DNA of 64,000 nucleotides, from positions 15,500,001 to 15,564,000 of the forward strand of contig OZ059899.1 in assembly GCA_964057225.1 (NCBI GenBank), read 5' to 3'. Positions within the stretch are counted from its first letter, which is position 1; each line of letters starts with the position of its first letter. Positions 28,501 through 59,983 of the stretch are shown piece by piece. Origin of the DNA: Auanema rhodensis. Lineage: Eukaryota; Animalia; Nematoda. The notes beneath the pieces are model-generated. The model did no database searches and was not told the origin of the DNA. It saw only the letters and a program-made list of their open reading frames with translations. The translations under genes and the position numbers were made by a program.

Positions 28501-28651
28501 ATATTTATTATTTTTTTTGTGCTCAAATCTCAATCATAGAACTTTTATCATTCTTGTGTTTCATACTTTCTTTTGAATTAGCTTTGTCATACTAACAAGA
28601 TATTTGGATTTGTTTCAGCTGAACAGCAATACAGATCTACAAATCCAGAAA

Positions 28652-30566
28652 ATGACAAGTCAAAAATTTCCATTTCCCGTGAGTTTTATAATAAAAATAA
28701 TTATTTTAATTTTTTTGAATGTATGTATTATAAGCATTTTCTTATATATTTAGACCATGCCTTTCTCTCGTGAAATTCATAATGGATGTGCTATAAATAC
28801 TTCAATTATTTTGAAAGGTAAACCTTACGCTGATCAAAAAAGGTTTTGTTTGTAACGTATAATTCAAATTTCTAAACATATTATGTTTAAGGACACTTAC
28901 ACTTCAACTTAAAAGTGAGAAAGATATCGCTCTTCACATAACTTTGCCGTTAGGTACACATGGAAAGGTTAATTTTAATTTTAAATTTCCTAATATTTTA
29001 CAATAAAATTCATATTCTTGAGTTGATCATATGACAGCTCATCTCATTTTGAAAAAGAAATGTCCGATGAGTCAGTTCATATCTAATTTCATAAATAAAC
29101 ATGATGATATCATTGTCAGTTTAACGGTATATTCTAGATGGTTGTAACTTCACAAGTGAATGGGAACTTCTCCAGTGCGATTGAAAAATCTATCTTCTTA
29201 CCTAATGATAATACTTTTCAATTTCATATTAGAATGAACACACACGCAGCAGAAGTAAAAACACATGGCATTATCTTCATTCAACTCTTTTCTTTCTAGA
29301 TCTACAACGATAATGTTCATCTTACTGATTTTGTTCATCGAGTTGATCCATTAGCTGTTAAAACGTTCTCTGTAGAAGGACCTGTGCTTGTTGAAGTCAT
29401 TCGTTTTGATCCGCCAAGCGGTAAGTATATTCAACATTTTTGAATATGGACGCCTATTCAGGAGCATCGTTGGATCCATTGCCATCTTACGAAGATGCTT
29501 CCAAGAACTCTATTCCTATTTCGTCAATGAGTCAGTTATCGTTAGGTAATATTGAAATATTCATTTCATACGATTTGATAGTTTTTCAGGACCCTCTTCT
29601 TCTCAACAACCTCAAACGAGGGGCATTCCAGTTTTGCCGTTACAGCCAGAGCTTTCTCGAAACCCCATACCTACTGCTCCATTTCCAAATTCTACAGTTC
29701 CTTATTCAACATCTTCAGCTCCCTATGTTCCTCCTTATCCTGCATCATCATCTAGCAAATCAGTATGAACAACATCTTTTTAATATATAAAGTAATCTTT
29801 TCCAGGAAGAGAAGAAAGTCCCATATCCAGAAAAAGAGTCTAATCAATTGCCTCCATCACTTCAACCATATAACATACCTTTCCAAGTAAGGAAACACTT
29901 TGAGGCACATAAACGAACATTTTTTAGCAAGCTGTTCCTATGAGCTCCCAGGGAACTATCAATCCTCAAGCTAATCCTGGAATCATACCTAATGGAGCTT
30001 CAGGAATGCCACCTATGTCAAACATTCCATCACAGGGAGGAGTTCCTATAGCCGGTGTAGCACCTATGATAAATCCAGGAATACCAGGAATGCCAGGAAC
30101 AACAATACCAGGAATGCCAGGAACTACAGTACCAGGAATACCAGGAACTACAGTACCAGGAATACCAACGGCATCAGTTAATCCTGTTGCTCAGATACAG
30201 CCTATGAGCTATCCATACAACCCCAACCCACCAGTCTATAACCCATATCAACAAAATCCACACACAACGGTAGAACCGATTAAGTTTGAGGGTTTCAGAA
30301 TAAGTTTTTTTTCAGATTGTGCATGCTCAACCAGTACCCGGAACAGTAATACAACAGCCTCAACTATACCAGCAATACCCTCAAGTTTATCAATACCCAA
30401 GTAATTTTAAAATCATTAAATTAATGACATATTAATTACTTTATAGTGTATGGTTATGGATGTCCCACGGTCTACTATGAAGAAGGATATGTAAGCGATT
30501 CATTTTACCTATAGATAACAAGTACATTCCTTTTAGGGACATCATCATCATCATCATCACTGTTGA
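28652..30566 (+). CDS. Galectin-like (atypical CRD) protein with long Pro/Gly/Tyr/Gln-rich C-terminal tail ending in His7-Cys
   Basis: Spliced: MTSQKFPFPTMPFSREIHNGCAINTSIILKGKP...KDIALHITLPL...VNGNFSSAIEK...FQFHIRM...IYNDNVHLTDFVHRVDPLAVKTFSVEGPV. This fits the galectin beta-sandwich pattern PF..I...I...G, IALH, F.HR, .I.G. It continues PLPSYEDA, IPTAPF, (PG[IM]PGTT[IV])n, NPPVY and ends GYGHHHHHHHC*. TGA at 30564-30566. Confidence 0.82.
30076..30166 (+). repeat. Coding 24-nt tandem repeat encoding PG(M/I)PGTT(I/V)
   Basis: CCAGGAAT(G/A)CCAGGAAC(A/T)ACA(A/G)TA repeated about 3 times, plus partial flanking copies. Confidence 0.9.
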
Positions 30567-31111
30567 ATCAAATTATTAAAATATAATCTGGGTATTTCAC
30601 CACTACTACTAAAATAAAATAAATCGTTCTGTGTAACACACTTTTTTAAAAACAAATTGTTAGCAAAAAGCGGAACATAATTGTTAAATATAAAGAAGAT
30701 AAGATGTTTCAAGTTCTTGGCCACGGTTCTAATGAACAATAAACCTAGCAATGCATACAGAAAACAACCTTACACCAGCAGTAACTTACAGGATATACGA
30801 AACACAACATGTAAAATGCAAGAACATCGAACAAGTGGAGACTGTACATTCATCACTACACAGTAAGCAAAAAGTTGAGGTCGATCTTACAGTAAATACT
30901 GGGGAGAGACATGTAACAGGAAAAATAGATCGAAGCTGAAAAGCTTCTACGTATACAGATGACATAAAACAGGAATAACATGCAACGAAAAGTATTTTTT
31001 TTTGTAAAAAAAAATTAATTGAAACTCTAAGAATCCTGAGTCATGCATACAAACTGGCTTCTACATAGACTAGGTCAAATAAAGAAGTATTGATTCAAAC
31101 GATAAAATCAT

Positions 31112-32438
31112 TTATGGACTATGATCCTCCCTTTCTTTTCGAGGAGTTTTCTTGGGACTAAAGACTAGATGAACCTTTGGCCGTTCCCGAAACTAAAATG
31201 TTCAAATTTATACATAATGTTTTCTTTCCGAGATGTGAAACCTTTTTTTCTTCTTCAACGGTTCCTCCGGTATTTGATAAAAACAATTCTATATGAGATT
31301 TAGCATTTTCGCAGTGACGCGCATTTTGACCTATAACTTCCACAGGAAATTCTCCGTCCTTTTTTGATTCAGTATGAAGCTGGAAATTAAATAATCGACT
31401 CAAAGAATAGTCGGTATCTCCGAACAGTAATAGAACAACCGGTAGCATCTTCAATTCTTTTTTTGTTAACACCACGTGTTCCGATCAGTCGAGGAGCATC
31501 CGAAGAACGGACCATGAACATCAAACGTTCTTTTCTTCTTGTACCGTTGATCCGAATTTGAGATACTTCGTTACTTACTTCGGTTGATGAACCCTATAAA
31601 ATTGAAATAAATAAGATTGGCACAAATTCAAGACTTACCAAGGAGGCAGATCTTTCCTGCTGACCTTCGTTGCCTCCATAGTATCTTGCGAAAGGTTCGT
31701 TCCAAGTAGTAGCACAGTCCGGAGAATTCACATGTTGATGTTCCGTAGCTAAAAACATTAAAATCAATAGTTGAGCCTATTTTTTCTTAGAAAAACGCAC
31801 CACTAGGAAATCGTGAAAAATCCGTATCTGGAGCAGTGTCTTCGAATACTGAAAATTGATGGCACATACGATCGATCATTGCTCGAGCATGATTAACAGA
31901 TTCAATAGGCCCGTACCAACTTACAGTACCATTCAATTCAATCTGAAATAAATGCATCTGTCACTAAAATCAAAAATGTGAGATACTAATAGGTCAGCCA
32001 CTCCAGTCTCTCTCATTAAAAGATGTTTGAAAAGTGAAATGAGAGCAACTTGATGAATGCTGTATTGTACTGTTTGACTATGAACACATAGTTGACTTAA
32101 AAGAGATACTCGCATGGCTCTGAAAGTGCTTGGGTTGTATTTCTCTGATAACATGAGTAATTGTACTGACTTTTTCATATCACAATCATGCCATGCTTTC
32201 TTCAAAGAATTTTCAATACTTTGGACATGGGTGGATTCCTCATGCGAGATGGCAATACAGTCTTCTTCGAGATTGAACTCAGCACAACCAGAATCTTCTA
32301 ATGATGACAACGTGTCACTTCCTTCTTTTTCTAAGAAAAAAAAAATTTTTTTAGTTCCTCTTTTTTCTTGCCTCGTAGAAAACGCAGGAATTCCTTAGAG
32401 GCAGGTATACAATCAGTAACAGTTGCCCGAGATGACAT
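31112..32438 (-). CDS. KH-domain RNA-binding protein (one clear C-terminal KH domain)
   Basis: Seven exons: [22 protein letters not shown]...[35 protein letters not shown]|[34 protein letters not shown], with an intact IGxxG loop. TAA at 31114-31112. The first intron is GC-AG. Confidence 0.85.
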
Positions 32439-33559
32439 GGAGGGCTATAAAAAATAGCTGTTATAACAAATAAATAAATAAATACATATATAAAACCAAA
32501 GTACAAAATTAAATATATCATTCAAGCCTAAATTAATTAATGGCCTAACTGATTAAAGTTTAAAAAAAAACTAAATAAGAAAGATCATAGACCGTCGTAA
32601 ACAACGGTCAATCATTTAACGTAAATAATAATTTGAAAGTTGGATTTTAGGCTAGTCTACTTACAGATTTGGAAAATTTGCATATTATCAATCAATCAAT
32701 AAATTTGGCTTATGAGGATTAATTGTTTTTTTTTAATTTAAAGAAATTAAAGATAAGAACTAGATATAAATCAAAATAATCATAAAATTTTATAATTTCC
32801 ATCAACTACTTGAGTGAAAACGTTTTATTATTATAGTTTACTTCCTTATTTTCATCTGTAATATTATTTATTATTTTAATTTTTTAAAATTTATTCAGTT
32901 AATTATTAAACTCCTCATATTTCATGATAAATTTTCATAATTGTCTCGATATATCAGTCATATCTTCCAATATTTTCACTTTTCCCGGTTGCGAAAAATG
33001 CCCGAAGCTTCTCGCTAATTTAGGAATGGCAAGTATTTTTTCGTAATTTATATATTAACAAATGGCAGTTAAATGAGGAATGACATTAATGTAGATCACC
33101 AGGAAGTGGGTTCCTAGTATTGAAAAAGTATATTTCATTAAATGTCAAAAAAAAAGTAAAATTTTGGTTGTTATGTGTTATCGCAATAATTTGTAAATTC
33201 AATTGGTGTCATTCTTAGTTTCTTCGTTTTTAACAGCTGCCAGCAGATAACCTTCCTCCTAAACACCTTCGAAGTCTTTTGGCTTCCGTCTAGCTTGGAT
33301 GATGTCGATGAACAATTGTCGCTCTGGGAACTAAGCTCAATATCTATATCTTCGTAGAAAAGTTTACAAATCATTGTTTGGCTTTTCATTCAACTTCTTA
33401 TCTTTTGCTGTTGATGTTAATCCCATTCGAAATGTCTATTTCAACAATTTGTAAAAATTATTTTTGATGCTTTTTTTAAAAAATAACCATAAATTTGAAA
33501 TAGCGCATGGTTCTTAATGCATATATTTTTATATTTTGAATTATATTCTTATTTTAGAT

Positions 33560-34309: not shown

Positions 34310-34474
34310 TATAGCAAATAAGACATGAAATAATTTCATTCAAATGTTTATTTATTGGAATTTTTTTTATAAATGTATGAAATATTCGTAAAGATAAACT
34401 TTTTTTTATTAAGTAGTTCTGAAAAACCCTATTTTGTCAATGTCCAGTACCAAACGTCAAAGGGAAAATGTTGT

Positions 34475-34556
34475 GATCAGGTGGCCGAGTGGTTAAGGCG
34501 ATGGACTGCTAATCCATTGGGGTTTCCCCGCGTGAGTTCGAATCTCATCCTGATCG
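34475..34556 (+). tRNA. tRNA-Ser (anticodon GCT)
   Basis: GATCAGG/CCTGATC acceptor stem, A box TGGCCGAGTGG, anticodon arm ATGGA-CTGCTAA-TCCAT, long variable arm GGGG-TTT-CCCC, B box GTTCGAATC, and TTTT downstream. 82 nt. Confidence 0.98.
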
Positions 34557-34843
34557 AATCATTTTGCATTAATATATAATAGCTGAAATGTTTATTCAAT
34601 ATTGAATAAAGGGTTGATACTTTGGCAAACTGTTTTTTAAGAAAAATTTAATTCAACAGTATTCACTAGCATATTCTTGTATTCGGAAATTGAAATTGCT
34701 CTAATGCTAATCTTAACAGTGCTCCATTGCTAAATGTTTCTTTTAGTTATAACAAACTATCTAATTTTAATCATTTATTCATATTTTTTATAATTATGGA
34801 GTGTTCATGCTTTGAATATAATTGATAAATTGTAGAATTTACA

Positions 34844-57369: not shown

Positions 57370-58909
57370 GCAACTAGTGTGAGAAACATAAGGCATAGGT
57401 TAAAGCTTGAAAGAGATTTTTCTCATTAAAAAGATTACTTAAAGCTTAAAATAAACTTGATATCCATATGATCATTCTATCTCATTCTTCTCCATGTAAG
57501 AGCTTGCTGAATCTTTGAATCCAATACCCTAGTGTTGAGCTGTATCTCTGTCGTATTTCATGTATTTCCCTATATAGATCTGCACGTATCACTTTGTACT
57601 TCTCTCCCTATATGTATATATAAACCTTTTCTTATTCTCTTTTTTCATCATAAAGCCTTAATTTCTCTCTTTCCCTCTCTTCCAGCTACTCTGTCTTTGG
57701 TATATGTATCGATTTTTCACATGTGTATGGGTGCTATCTGATTTGTTGATTCTCTCAGGCAGACCCCGTCGCTAGCCAGAGTGAAAGGAGACTCAATCTT
57801 TCTCTCTCTCTCTCTATGTCTCTTCTTTTCTCTCTTTTTCTGTATCTTCACGCCCTGATGACTGCTGTTCGTTCTTCAGTGAAACAGGACACAGCTAATG
57901 GCGTTAACGGTGAACATCTTCACTTCTGGAGCAACACCTACTATCACGTCGTTGTAGTCTTCATGCTACATCATGCTTACTATGCGTTTCAAGTCACTCA
58001 GCGCCCTCCTCTTCAGGAACATATTAGGTAAACAACGTGAAGCATTCTGAATCTATTAGAAGCAGTGCTAGTGATGACTTCATAGAAAGTCCATGCATGA
58101 CAACATTTAAGAGGTTCGAAAAGAAGAATTAGTCAGAATAGAAGAGAGAACTATGAGATATTGGATAAGGCAGTAGTTTGGCAGAAAGATTAATACAGAG
58201 AGAATGAGTGAGTGAGAGAGAGAGAGAGAAAAAAAAAAAGAAAAAGAGAGAGGGAGTGGAAGTGAAAGAGTAAAGCATTTCAGAAAGAGATGGAGAGAAA
58301 TCTTCGAAGAAAAAACGTTTAAGTACAATAAATTCATGAAGGTATAACAGCCAATACAACCAACATTTCAAACTTGACAGGCTCATCAGCATGTATTCAG
58401 GACTTATGAAGTTCATAGCTATAAGGAATACATTGTCTTATGGCTTATGTAAGTTTCAACATTACCTACAAATGCTCATATTCGTAAAAGACATTATTGA
58501 CAATTCATCCGACTTTACATCTTCATTTCAAGCTCTACCATTTCCTTTTCTTCCACATATCTTTCTTTCTCTTTCTCTCTCTCTCTCTCACACTCAATCT
58601 CTCCCTCTCTCTCTATCAATTTCTCTCTCTTTCTTTCTCCCTGTCTCTCTCCCTTTCTGTATATATTTTGGTTAATTGATCTATTGTATTCAATTTTTTT
58701 GATTATTTGAACTTAAAAGAAACAGTTGTTCCTTCCATATTCACAGCTTACTTTCTCATTTTAAGGTTCCATACAATAGGCCACATCTATCTAACTATCT
58801 CTATACATTTATTTTTTTTTCACAACCATAAACTCATAATATTTCCTTCTATTTCGCCGTCTTTTCTCTACTACTCCTCTTTTTCTTTTCTCTACCTCGT
58901 CCTCTCTCT

Positions 58910-58949
<40 letters not shown>

Positions 58950-59983
58950 TCTATTATTTTCTATTCCCTCTTTCTGTGTTTTACTCTATACACCACATCC
59001 CCCTCCCCCTACTATGCTTCTCTCCTTCTCTCTCTATCTCTTTCTCTTTTTCTCTCTCTTACACTCTCTTTTTCTATCTATCTCTATCTATCTCTTCTCC
59101 TCCTCCACCAGCATTGCCAGCCCACCCAACACATACATACACATACACACATACACACACACACACACACACACCGTCAAGCTATCTGAGGCTGTCCTTC
59201 TTTGCGTTTCTTCACTCTCTCTCCATCATTCTCTCTAATCGTTGTCAAACTCTCTTCATATACTATGTTATTTCATCCATTTTTCATGTTAAAATGTCTC
59301 ATCATACTACATACTCTCTGATCTATCTCTTGCCTTTTAGTCTAACATTCTCTTCATTCCCAATGTTATTCTACTCAGCTGTTTAGTTGTCGGCCCTCTA
59401 TGAACTATTCCGTGATGTCTCACAGACAGAGACACTTCTTCTGTCTCCTCCACTCTTTGCTGTACCCCAAGTCCCTCTTAGGTCTTCCAGCTCAATTCTC
59501 ACCCTTTATAGCTCTTTCTCTCTTTATTTCTCTTAGTGGAACTTCTAGAGTCTCAAGCCATTGATCATCTAATTATCTCTTTAATATCAGGTTGTTTCTC
59601 ATTGTCGCCCTTTCGTTCCTCTCTTGCCTCGTCAATAATAACTCATTGAACGCAGAAGCAAACGATATAGTTGTCTGTTAACTAGCCTCATCCAGACATC
59701 CGAACGAACTCACACAAGGCATTGTCATGATAACGAGAACGTTTCGTCTACTATTTTGCCTCAGGCCCAATTGGCTCCTCATGTTCGCCACCACCGTTCA
59801 CTTTCGTTCACTATCAAAATCGCCTTTTCAACTATTGTCATAGCATCTGACAGCCTACTAATGATTTTTCCTTATTCCTCTATTTAGATGAACATATGTA
59901 TGCACATTCATCAGGCTTGTGGTCCTACTGTTTCTCATATCACGTGTTTCAACCTTAAGTTCTGAAAATTCATCTTTCCCCCC

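What the first reader, a model, noticed from the sequence alone, without database searches (positions are those of the whole stretch)
28652..30566. Inverted-chimera galectin-like protein carrying NEDD4 and ESCRT-I late-domain motifs: candidate new membrane-sorting/repair adaptor
Seen: an N-terminal galectin-type domain whose sugar-binding residues are degenerate (ALHITLPL for ALHFNPRF; NGNFSSAIE for the WxxExR motif). It is followed by PLPSYEDA (LPSY, 29479-29490), IPTAPF (PTAP, 29670-29681), NPPVY (30228-30239), PG(M/I)PGTT repeats and a Y/P/Q-rich tail. There is no signal peptide or TM segment. Known: (L/P)PxY binds NEDD4-family WW domains and P(T/S)AP binds the TSG101 UEV. The two co-occur in ARRDC1, LITAF and viral Gag proteins. 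Galectin-3 has a P/G/Y-rich tail, but N-terminal to its CRD, and acts in lysosome damage responses. Inference: a cytosolic galectin-fold adaptor coupling cargo or damaged membranes to ubiquitin ligase and ESCRT, possibly condensate-forming. I know of no description of this architecture.
Basis: partly seen in the sequence, partly recalled or inferred. Interest (0 to 1): 0.78.

Follow-up and report, generated by a model that had tools for sequence, protein, structure and literature searches.

The report
Sugar-blind nematode galectin with PY tail
This is a real 12-exon roundworm gene for a galectin-shaped protein that has lost its sugar-binding residues.

Summary
Window 28652-30566 (+) is a clean 12-exon, 422-codon nematode gene. 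It encodes an N-terminal galectin-fold domain with one of seven canonical sugar-contact residues left, then a disordered P/S/Q/G/Y-rich tail. The tail carries LPSY, PTAP and PPVY at the stated coordinates and ends in His7-Cys.

It is not an orphan. It belongs to a conserved family in rhabditid and strongylid nematodes: Auanema sp. JU1783, Diploscapter, all nine Caenorhabditis sequences sampled, and hookworms and other strongylids. The C. elegans member is NP_741097/Q9UA61. Databases label these proteins only "Galectin", and I found no paper on them.

- **First PY motif:** xP[ST]Y[EQD][EQ]A, just after the domain, is present in 22 of 23 orthologs, so it is not chance.
- **P(S/T)AP:** invariant across the nine Caenorhabditis sequences, and present here and in two hookworms. 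It is absent from the closest relative and from most strongylids.
- **PPxY-NPY:** shared with Caenorhabditis.

Motif counts alone are not significant in such proline-rich tails; the evidence is positional conservation.

Most likely this is a cytosolic, non-lectin galectin-fold protein that recruits Nedd4-family WW ligases, and ESCRT-I in some lineages. Binding is untested. It is a new variant of a known kind: galectin-3 already uses PSAP to bind Tsg101.

The exons were never joined for any search or fold.

The parts
28652..28678 (+). Exon 1 (start codon; MTSQKFPFP). A TTTCAG acceptor 34 nt upstream, ending at 28617, looks like a trans-splice site.
   Evidence: the trans-splice reading is inference from the sequence only
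28754..28842 (+). Exon 2, first strands of the galectin-fold domain
   Evidence: 80% identical to Auanema JU1783 ortholog residues 10-39
28892..28967 (+). Exon 3. Holds DIALHITLP (28923-28949), the degenerate counterpart of the galectin H-x-N-P-R motif.
29138..29254 (+). Exon 4. Holds NGNFSSAIE (29159-29185), the degenerate counterpart of W-G-x-E-x-R.
29300..29420 (+). Exon 5, last strands of the galectin fold (FVHRVDP...)
   Evidence: PF00337 E 0.015; PDB galectins E 0.014; the query that found the orthologs
29462..29545 (+). Exon 6, with the family-wide PY motif DPLPSYEDA (LPSY at 29479-29490)
   Evidence: conserved in 22 of 23 orthologs
29590..29762 (+). Exon 7, Pro/Ser-rich. Holds PTAP (29670-29681) and PPYP (29730-29741).
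   Evidence: No ortholog alignment supports this exon; it rests on the open frame and GT-AG sites.
29806..29886 (+). Exon 8, with EEKKVPYPEKE, which aligns with EKKPPYPEEN of JU1783
29928..30269 (+). Exon 9. Holds the (I/V)PG(M/I)PGTT repeats (DNA repeat 30082-30167) and PPVYNPY (PPVY at 30228-30239).
30316..30400 (+). Exon 10, Q/Y/P-rich
30447..30490 (+). Exon 11, the conserved YGYGCPTVYYEEGY block
30537..30566 (+). Exon 12: G-His7-Cys and the TGA stop. AATAAA lies at 30613.

Best explanation
The gene encodes a member of a conserved nematode family of cytosolic, single-domain galectin-fold proteins. These proteins have lost the canonical beta-galactoside contacts, and they carry a roughly 275-residue disordered tail built as a string of short linear motifs.

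Shown here:
- the gene model;
- the galectin fold, by homology to orthologs that were scored against Pfam and modelled;
- loss of the sugar-contact residues across the family;
- orthology and microsynteny;
- a PY-type motif 3-10 residues after the last strand that is kept in almost every ortholog;
- further islands (P[ST]APP, PPxY-NPY, a Tyr/Gly block, and a His-run plus Cys at the C-terminus) kept in parts of the family.

Inferred: the invariant xP[ST]Y[ED]xA motif docks WW domains of Nedd4-family HECT ligases, as the near-identical LPSYDEAL of Drosophila Commissureless does. In lineages with P(S/T)AP, including this worm and Caenorhabditis, the tail would also engage the UEV domain of TSG-101. 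The protein would then either act as an adaptor linking whatever its altered galectin face binds to ubiquitin/ESCRT sorting, or be itself a client exported in ESCRT-dependent vesicles. ARRDC1 and galectin-3 are the precedents.
For: Gene model: all GT-AG, ortholog-supported exon edges.

Fold: PF00337 at 61.7, 31.9, 39.7 and 40.1 bits in four orthologs. AlphaFold gives pLDDT above 90 for residues 1-140 and below 50 over most of the tail. Foldseek top hits are all galectin CRDs, with LEC-6 at rmsd 1.6 A.

Degenerate site: the window keeps 1 of 7 canonical residues, and family members keep 0-2.

Orthology: the gene is single copy in its own genome. Microsynteny with Auanema sp. JU1783 puts a galectin-like gene on the + strand next to a KH gene on the - strand.

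PY motif: present in 22 of 23 orthologs spanning Auanema, Caenorhabditis and strongylids.

PSAPP: invariant in nine Caenorhabditis sequences, rank 9 of 179 tail windows.

PPxY-NPY: shared by the window, Caenorhabditis and JU1783.

Partner: a TSG101-type UEV gene exists in this genome.

Topology: no TM or signal peptide.

Precedents: galectin-3 PSAP binds Tsg101 (PMC7563435). The LPSY of Comm, in the context LPSYDEAL, is a functional Nedd4 motif (PMC10614773).
Against: No binding data exist for any member.

The first position of the PY motif is V or A in hookworms and Oesophagostomum (VPSY, APSY), which is outside the strict (L/P)PxY rule.

The motif lies so close to the domain that its conservation could be structural. 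In the model it has pLDDT about 64 and a short helix at residues 153-158.

PTAP is missing from the closest ortholog and from most strongylids. Composition alone yields P[ST]AP in 4-26% of shuffled tails.

The tail alignment between distant members is ambiguous.

What the galectin face binds is unknown.

There is no transcript evidence for this species. Expression is shown only for the C. elegans ortholog, as an exact mRNA-like contig.
Confidence: 0.5

Rival explanations
1. The protein is a client rather than an adaptor. The PY and P(S/T)AP motifs serve only to load the protein itself into ESCRT-dependent vesicles for leaderless secretion, as PSAP does for galectin-3. It then acts outside the cell.
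For: Galectins lack signal peptides and are exported unconventionally. Galectin-3 uses PSAP and Tsg101 for exosomal release (PMC7563435). The window protein has no signal peptide.
Against: An extracellular role usually relies on glycan binding, but the canonical sugar site is lost across the whole family. P(S/T)AP is not family-wide.
Confidence: 0.2
2. The tail is mainly a self-associating or metal-binding low-complexity scaffold (Tyr/Gln/Pro-rich, with a His-run and terminal Cys), or a docking region for other proline-recognition proteins. Candidates are ALG-2-type PPYPXnYP readers, YAP or other WW proteins, and SH2 domains after Tyr phosphorylation of YE[ED]A. Nedd4 and ESCRT-I would not be the relevant partners.
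For: The YGY...YY.GG-His-run-Cys end is conserved in rhabditids, and a ...YRRSSSCCSD end in strongylids. QPYP(V/M)YQQYP is invariant in Caenorhabditis and resembles the ALG-2 type 1 motif PPYPXnYP (PMC4346919). The window has PPYP. The tail is predicted to be disordered.
Against: None of these features is as widely conserved as the PY motif. The window lacks a well-spaced PPYPXnYP. C. elegans isoform c lacks the His/Cys end altogether. This reading is compatible with the main explanation rather than exclusive of it.
Confidence: 0.2
3. This is an ordinary divergent galectin whose tail motifs are chance products of proline-rich composition and have no function.
For: Shuffled tails give [LP]PxY in about 50% of trials and P[ST]AP in about 11%. 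Figures are similar in the orthologs.
Against: The same PY motif sits at the same place in 22 of 23 orthologs across deep nematode divergences. PSAPP is invariant across Caenorhabditis. Chance does not give positional conservation.
Confidence: 0.05

Closest known systems
Galectin-3 (chimera-type galectin)
   Same: One galectin-fold domain plus a long Pro/Gly/Tyr-rich disordered tail. No signal peptide. The tail carries a P(S/T)AP late-domain motif, which in galectin-3 binds Tsg101 (PMC7563435). The galectin-3 CRD is among the sequence and fold matches of the ortholog.
   Different: The tail is C-terminal here and N-terminal in galectin-3. The sugar-contact residues are lost here and intact in galectin-3. 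The hallmark motif here is a PY motif, which galectin-3 is not reported to use. A His-run plus Cys terminus is present only here.
ARRDC1 and other alpha-arrestins
   Same: A beta-sandwich domain followed by a disordered C-terminal tail with PPxY and PSAP motifs. This is the arrangement by which ARRDC1 recruits WW ligases and TSG101 for vesicle budding (as summarised in PMC7563435, and from general knowledge).
   Different: The fold is galectin, not arrestin: all top Foldseek hits are galectin CRDs. There is no evidence of membrane association.
Nedd4 adaptors with LPSY[DE][DE]A-type motifs (Drosophila Commissureless; NDFIP1/2 from memory)
   Same: The motif context is nearly identical: the window has PLPSYEDA, the family has LPSYE[EQ]A, and Comm has LPSYDEAL (primer sequence in PMC10614773).
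   Different: Those adaptors are membrane proteins, whereas this protein has no TM segment. There is no homology outside the motif.
Sugar-site-degenerate galectin relatives (galectin-related protein LGALSL, galectin-10/13/16 group)
   Same: A galectin fold with some or all canonical beta-galactoside contacts replaced. Galectin-16 and galectin-10 are among the matches. Galectin-16 has a noted but untested PPSY (PMC7563435).
   Different: Those proteins are domain-only and about 140-170 aa, without a long motif-bearing tail. They are vertebrate lineages, not orthologs.
C. elegans NP_741097.1 / Q9UA61 ('Galectin domain-containing protein', chr III 2.418-2.424 Mb) and its nematode orthologs
   Same: Same family and architecture: degenerate galectin domain, LPSYEQA, PSAPP, PPGYNPY, YGY...HHHHHCD.
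   Different: About 34-40% identity to the Auanema member. The window has lineage-specific PG(M/I)PGTT repeats and lacks the Caenorhabditis/Diploscapter island GFSxHPYPLPGLIDN.

Membership tests
Galectin family (Pfam PF00337) | Sequence match to the family profile above the curated cut-off | tested here: inconclusive
   For the window only single exons could be scored. Exon 5 gives 15.2 bits, E 0.015, against a cut-off of 22.1 bits. Orthologs scored whole pass at 31.9-61.7 bits. The joined window protein was not scored, by rule.
Galectin family (Pfam PF00337) | Galectin beta-sandwich fold | tested here: met
   Tested on the closest ortholog, P0001, not on the window protein itself. Residues 1-140 have pLDDT above 90. 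Foldseek against the PDB gives galectin CRDs at E about 1e-13, TM 0.82-0.88. Window exons 2-6 align to P0001 without gaps in the strands.
Galectin family (Pfam PF00337) | Canonical beta-galactoside contacts H-x-N-x-R ... N ... W-x-x-E-x-R | tested here: not met
   The window reads H-T-P-T-F-A-E, keeping 1 of 7. The 23 orthologs keep 0-2 of 7.
Galectin family (Pfam PF00337) | Beta-galactoside binding | not testable with these tools
   Needs lactose or glycan-array binding of the recombinant domain.
Chimera-type galectin (galectin-3 type) | Single CRD with an N-terminal Pro/Gly/Tyr-rich tail | tested here: not met
   The tail is C-terminal. The domain begins about 10 residues after the start codon.
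Chimera-type galectin (galectin-3 type) | Conserved P(S/T)AP in the tail | tested here: inconclusive
   Present in the window, in all Caenorhabditis, and in Necator and A. ceylanicum. Absent from Auanema JU1783, Diploscapter and most strongylids.
Nedd4-family WW ligand (PY-motif protein) | (L/P)PxY motif in an accessible, disordered segment | tested here: met
   LPSY at 29479-29490 and PPVY at 30228-30239. The first lies in a segment with pLDDT about 64 just after the domain, and the second in a region below 50 in the ortholog model.
Nedd4-family WW ligand (PY-motif protein) | Motif conserved in orthologs | tested here: met
   22 of 23 orthologs have xP[ST]Y[EQD][EQ]A at the same place. Position 1 is L or P in most, and V or A in hookworms and Oesophagostomum.
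Nedd4-family WW ligand (PY-motif protein) | Physical binding to a WW domain | not testable with these tools
   Needs pull-down, ITC or two-hybrid assays.
Alpha-arrestin (ARRDC) adaptors | Arrestin N and C domains | tested here: not met
   There is no arrestin Pfam hit. The fold matches are galectins only.

The most novel reading that the evidence does not exclude
Rhabditid and strongylid nematodes possess a dedicated, sugar-blind galectin-fold adaptor whose conserved PY and P(S/T)AP tail recruits Nedd4-family ligases and ESCRT-I. It would be a functional analogue of ARRDC1 built on a galectin scaffold, driving vesicle budding, cargo down-regulation or membrane repair. The galectin face would have been re-purposed for a protein or non-canonical ligand.
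Probability: 0.25. Interest if true: 0.75.

Novelty: new variant of a known kind. Interest (0 to 1): 0.5.

Why it matters
Galectin-3 is so far the one galectin shown to use a viral-type late-domain motif, and the review read here says PSAP seems reserved for it (PMC7563435). This family shows that nematodes have independently kept PY and PSAP motifs on a galectin fold for a long time, even though that fold no longer has the sugar site. That points to an intracellular, glycan-independent job for a galectin scaffold in ubiquitin/ESCRT trafficking.

The C. elegans ortholog is unnamed and apparently unstudied, so the idea can be tested with standard worm genetics. Parasitic strongylids, including hookworms, carry the family as well. 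That makes it relevant to parasite vesicle biology.

Tried and rejected
- **Pfam on nine single exons.** Only exon 5 gave a hit, and it was below threshold. The fold therefore had to be established through orthologs.
- **Word-index protein search with exon 9** (114 aa, low complexity). It found nothing; the tool's length window excludes full-length relatives.
- **The genome search 'relatives'.** Not available for this eukaryotic genome.
- **Genome-wide PF00337 scan of the own genome.** It lists 47 exon-level matches at E up to 1, from ordinary galectin genes plus weak sub-threshold repeats on contig C4, but not this gene. This shows how divergent the gene is exon by exon.
- **Adding the window's tail exons as fragments to the ortholog alignment.** The fragments overlapped and were placed ambiguously. 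I therefore make no claim that the PTAP here is positionally homologous to the Caenorhabditis QPTAP or PSAPP sites.
- **Motif counting against shuffles.** It is not significant by itself and was rejected as evidence.
- **ESM Atlas search with the C. elegans tail alone.** No usable hit.
- **Six literature searches for the family, its accessions or the architecture.** Nothing was found.
- **WormBase gene name of the C. elegans ortholog.** I could not determine it, so I cite accessions.
- **An ALG-2-binding reading of the tail.** I kept it only as part of a rival, because the window has PPYP without the spaced YP.
Full report
**What is there.** The window is nematode DNA: about 32% G+C, with 41-46-nt introns ending in TTTCAG or TTTTAG. 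Earlier notes of this scan call the genome a nematode of the Auanema type. My data agree, since the closest ortholog comes from Auanema sp. JU1783 and the neighbouring gene is syntenic.

From 28652 to 30566 on the + strand I built a 12-exon model. Every intron is GT-AG and the frame stays open for 1269 nt, giving 422 codons plus TGA. tblastn of three orthologs onto the window lands on exons 2-6 and 8-12 and stops at the proposed edges. Exons 1 and 7 rest on the open frame and splice sites alone. tblastx against the Auanema locus shows matching exon blocks. A TTTCAG acceptor 34 nt before the ATG and an AATAAA 47 nt after the stop fit a normal nematode mRNA (inference).

Exons were searched one by one by reference, and the whole-protein tests were run on database orthologs. 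In two scripts the exon translations were handled side by side: once for composition statistics and once for display in an alignment.

All stated features are present at the stated coordinates:
- LPSY at 29479-29490.
- PTAP at 29670-29681.
- PPVY at 30228-30239.
- DIALHITLP and NGNFSSAIE in place of the two galectin sugar-binding signatures.
- A 24-nt tandem repeat (3.6 copies, 95% matches) encoding the PG(M/I)PGTT units.
- A Tyr/Pro/Gln-rich end. The tail is 20% Pro, 11% Ser, 9% Gln, 8% Gly and 7% Tyr.
- No segment hydrophobic enough for a signal peptide or membrane span.

**Is the N-domain a galectin?** Exon by exon, the window gives only a sub-threshold hint. Exon 5 matches the last 35 positions of PF00337 at E 0.015, and its best PDB sequence matches are nematode galectins at E 0.014.

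The one exhaustive HMMER search, run with exon 5, returned five proteins. Four of them are 350-413 aa and match at residues 80-144, which is the architecture expected. Scored whole, these four pass the Pfam galectin cut-off, with 61.7 bits for the Auanema protein and 32-40 bits for the three strongylid proteins. The Auanema protein matches galectin-4, -3, -8, -9 and LEC-6 chains in the PDB by sequence, at E down to 5e-10.

An AlphaFold model of the Auanema protein, built on a 23-sequence ortholog alignment, has a confident beta-sandwich for residues 1-140 (pLDDT above 90) and a tail mostly below 50. Foldseek places the model among galectin CRDs at E about 1e-13 and TM 0.82-0.88, with C. elegans LEC-6 at 1.6 A. 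Window exons 2-6 align to the Auanema protein at 53-84% identity with no gaps in the strands. The fold is therefore established by close homology.

**The sugar site.** I used the HMMER alignment to the galectin-4 C-terminal CRD to locate the seven canonical contacts, H-N-R-N-W-E-R. The window reads H-T-P-T-F-A-E. Auanema reads H-T-P-N-Y-E-E. Strongylids read L-T-P-x-F/Y-E/A-E/D, and Caenorhabditis reads R/K-E/K-x-D-T/K-x-E. No member keeps more than two. The loss is old and family-wide, not a quirk of this gene.

**The family.** A profile search with the first orthologs found 30 proteins at E below 1e-5. They come from Auanema, Diploscapter, eight or more Caenorhabditis species and many strongylids: Ancylostoma, Necator, Nippostrongylus, Heligmosomoides, Teladorsagia, Ostertagia, Oesophagostomum, Strongylus, Dictyocaulus, Angiostrongylus and Parelaphostrongylus.

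Sources name them only 'Galectin', 'galactoside-binding lectin' or 'hypothetical protein'. The C. elegans member is NP_741097.1/Q9UA61 (426 aa, three isoforms) on chromosome III at 2.418-2.424 Mb. An exact mRNA-like contig from a sequencing run carries it. The ESM Atlas cluster holding it has 52 members, all nematode.

In its own genome the window gene is single copy. In Auanema sp. JU1783 the ortholog is followed by a KH-domain gene on the opposite strand, and the same holds in the window at 31118-32444. Whether the family extends beyond Rhabditina could not be tested with the searches left.

(a) The first PY motif is conserved. In 22 of 23 orthologs the sequence xP[ST]Y[EQD][EQ]A sits 3-10 residues after the last strand. 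The exception is a Diploscapter isoform model. The residue before the invariant Pro is L or P in most, but V in hookworms and A in Oesophagostomum.

(b) P(S/T)AP is lineage-dependent.
- All nine Caenorhabditis sequences have an invariant P-[ST]-A-P-P. It ranks 9th of 179 five-residue windows in their tails. Those tails are fairly well conserved overall, with a median window identity of 0.78.
- Six of the nine also have a second site, (Q/L)P[TS]AP, nearer the domain.
- Necator has two sites, and A. ceylanicum and the window have one each.
- Auanema JU1783, Diploscapter and the other strongylid models have none.

(c) PPVYNPY in the window corresponds to PPGYNPY in most Caenorhabditis and to LPPYNVYNPY in Auanema. 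Strongylids keep only xYNPY.

(d) Other islands are present in parts of the family:
- A YGY..P..YY.GG block followed by a His run and a terminal Cys(-Asp) in rhabditids, replaced in strongylids by YGSGCH.YRRSSSCCSD.
- GFSxHPYPLPGLIDN and QPYP(V/M)YQQYP in Caenorhabditis.

Counting motifs is not evidence by itself. Shuffled tails give P[ST]AP in 4-26% of trials and [LP]PxY in 15-79%.

**Mechanism.** What is shown is a cytosolic-type protein with a galectin fold lacking the canonical glycan contacts, and a disordered tail under selection at discrete short motifs.

What is inferred is that the near-universal PY motif docks WW domains of Nedd4-family ligases. Its context, LPSYE[DEQ]A, is almost that of the functional LPSYDEAL of Drosophila Commissureless (PMC10614773). 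From memory it also matches the LPSYDEA of NDFIP1/2. P(S/T)AP would add ESCRT-I through the TSG-101 UEV domain, a gene for which exists in this genome.

Two precedents combine a beta-sandwich domain with late-domain motifs in a disordered tail. ARRDC1 is one, and galectin-3 is the other; its PSAP binds Tsg101 for exosomal release (PMC7563435). I put about 0.5 on the WW-ligase and ESCRT adaptor-or-client reading as a whole, and less, about 0.35, on ESCRT-I binding in this particular species.

The main caveats:
- There are no binding data.
- The V and A variants at motif position 1 fall outside the strict rule.
- The PY segment may pack on the domain, since it has pLDDT about 64 and a short helix.
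- The ligand of the altered galectin face is unknown.

**Rivals.**
- The protein is purely a client for vesicular export, as galectin-3 is.
- The tail is chiefly a self-associating or metal-binding scaffold, or a site for other proline or phosphotyrosine readers. The PPYP and QPYPxxxxYP elements recall the ALG-2 type 1 motif PPYPXnYP (PMC4346919).
- The motifs are chance. The ortholog alignments largely exclude this one.

**Novelty.** The gene is one ortholog of a family already present in databases but unnamed there. Six literature searches found nothing on it. The principle of a galectin with a late-domain motif in a Pro/Gly/Tyr tail is published for galectin-3.

What differs here is the C-terminal position of the tail, the family-wide loss of the sugar site, the PY motif as hallmark, and the His/Cys terminus. 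I therefore rate it a new variant of a known kind, of moderate interest. It is mainly valuable because the hypothesis can be tested directly in C. elegans.

Noticed in passing
window 31118-32444 (- strand): A KH-domain gene lies tail-to-tail with the galectin-like gene. Its exons are 52-89% identical at the protein level to the gene in the same position in Auanema sp. JU1783 (L026:12042-13363), so microsynteny is conserved.
   Followed up: partly
window 30082-30167: A 24-nt tandem repeat (3.6 copies, 95% matches) encodes (I/V)PG(M/I)PGTT. No repeat of this unit is evident in the Auanema JU1783 or Caenorhabditis orthologs, so it looks like a recent lineage-specific expansion inside the coding tail.
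   Followed up: partly
window 34474-34557 (+): A tRNA-Ser(GCT) gene, found by both ARAGORN and Rfam (64 bits).
   Followed up: no
P0010 (Necator americanus, 706 aa) versus P0009 (535 aa): One Necator gene model joins the galectin-like protein to a C-terminal UBA/TS-N domain. It may be a real ubiquitin-related fusion or an annotation merge with the next gene. If real, it would bear on the ubiquitin reading.
   Followed up: no
P0034 (C. elegans isoform c, 353 aa); locus L024: C. elegans makes, or is annotated with, an isoform that keeps the domain, LPSY, PSAP and PPGY but lacks the YGY...HHHHHCD end. This suggests that the His/Cys terminus is an optional module.
   Followed up: no
window about 58700-59400: Long CT- and CA-rich simple sequence gives spurious ORFs full of SLSLSL and HTHTHT.
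   Followed up: no
G000:C4:13055000-13100000: The genome-wide PF00337 scan shows about a dozen weak, near-identical matches (about 16 bits, profile positions 72-101) spaced a few kb apart on contig C4. This may be a tandem array of a diverged or decayed galectin-like exon.
   Followed up: no
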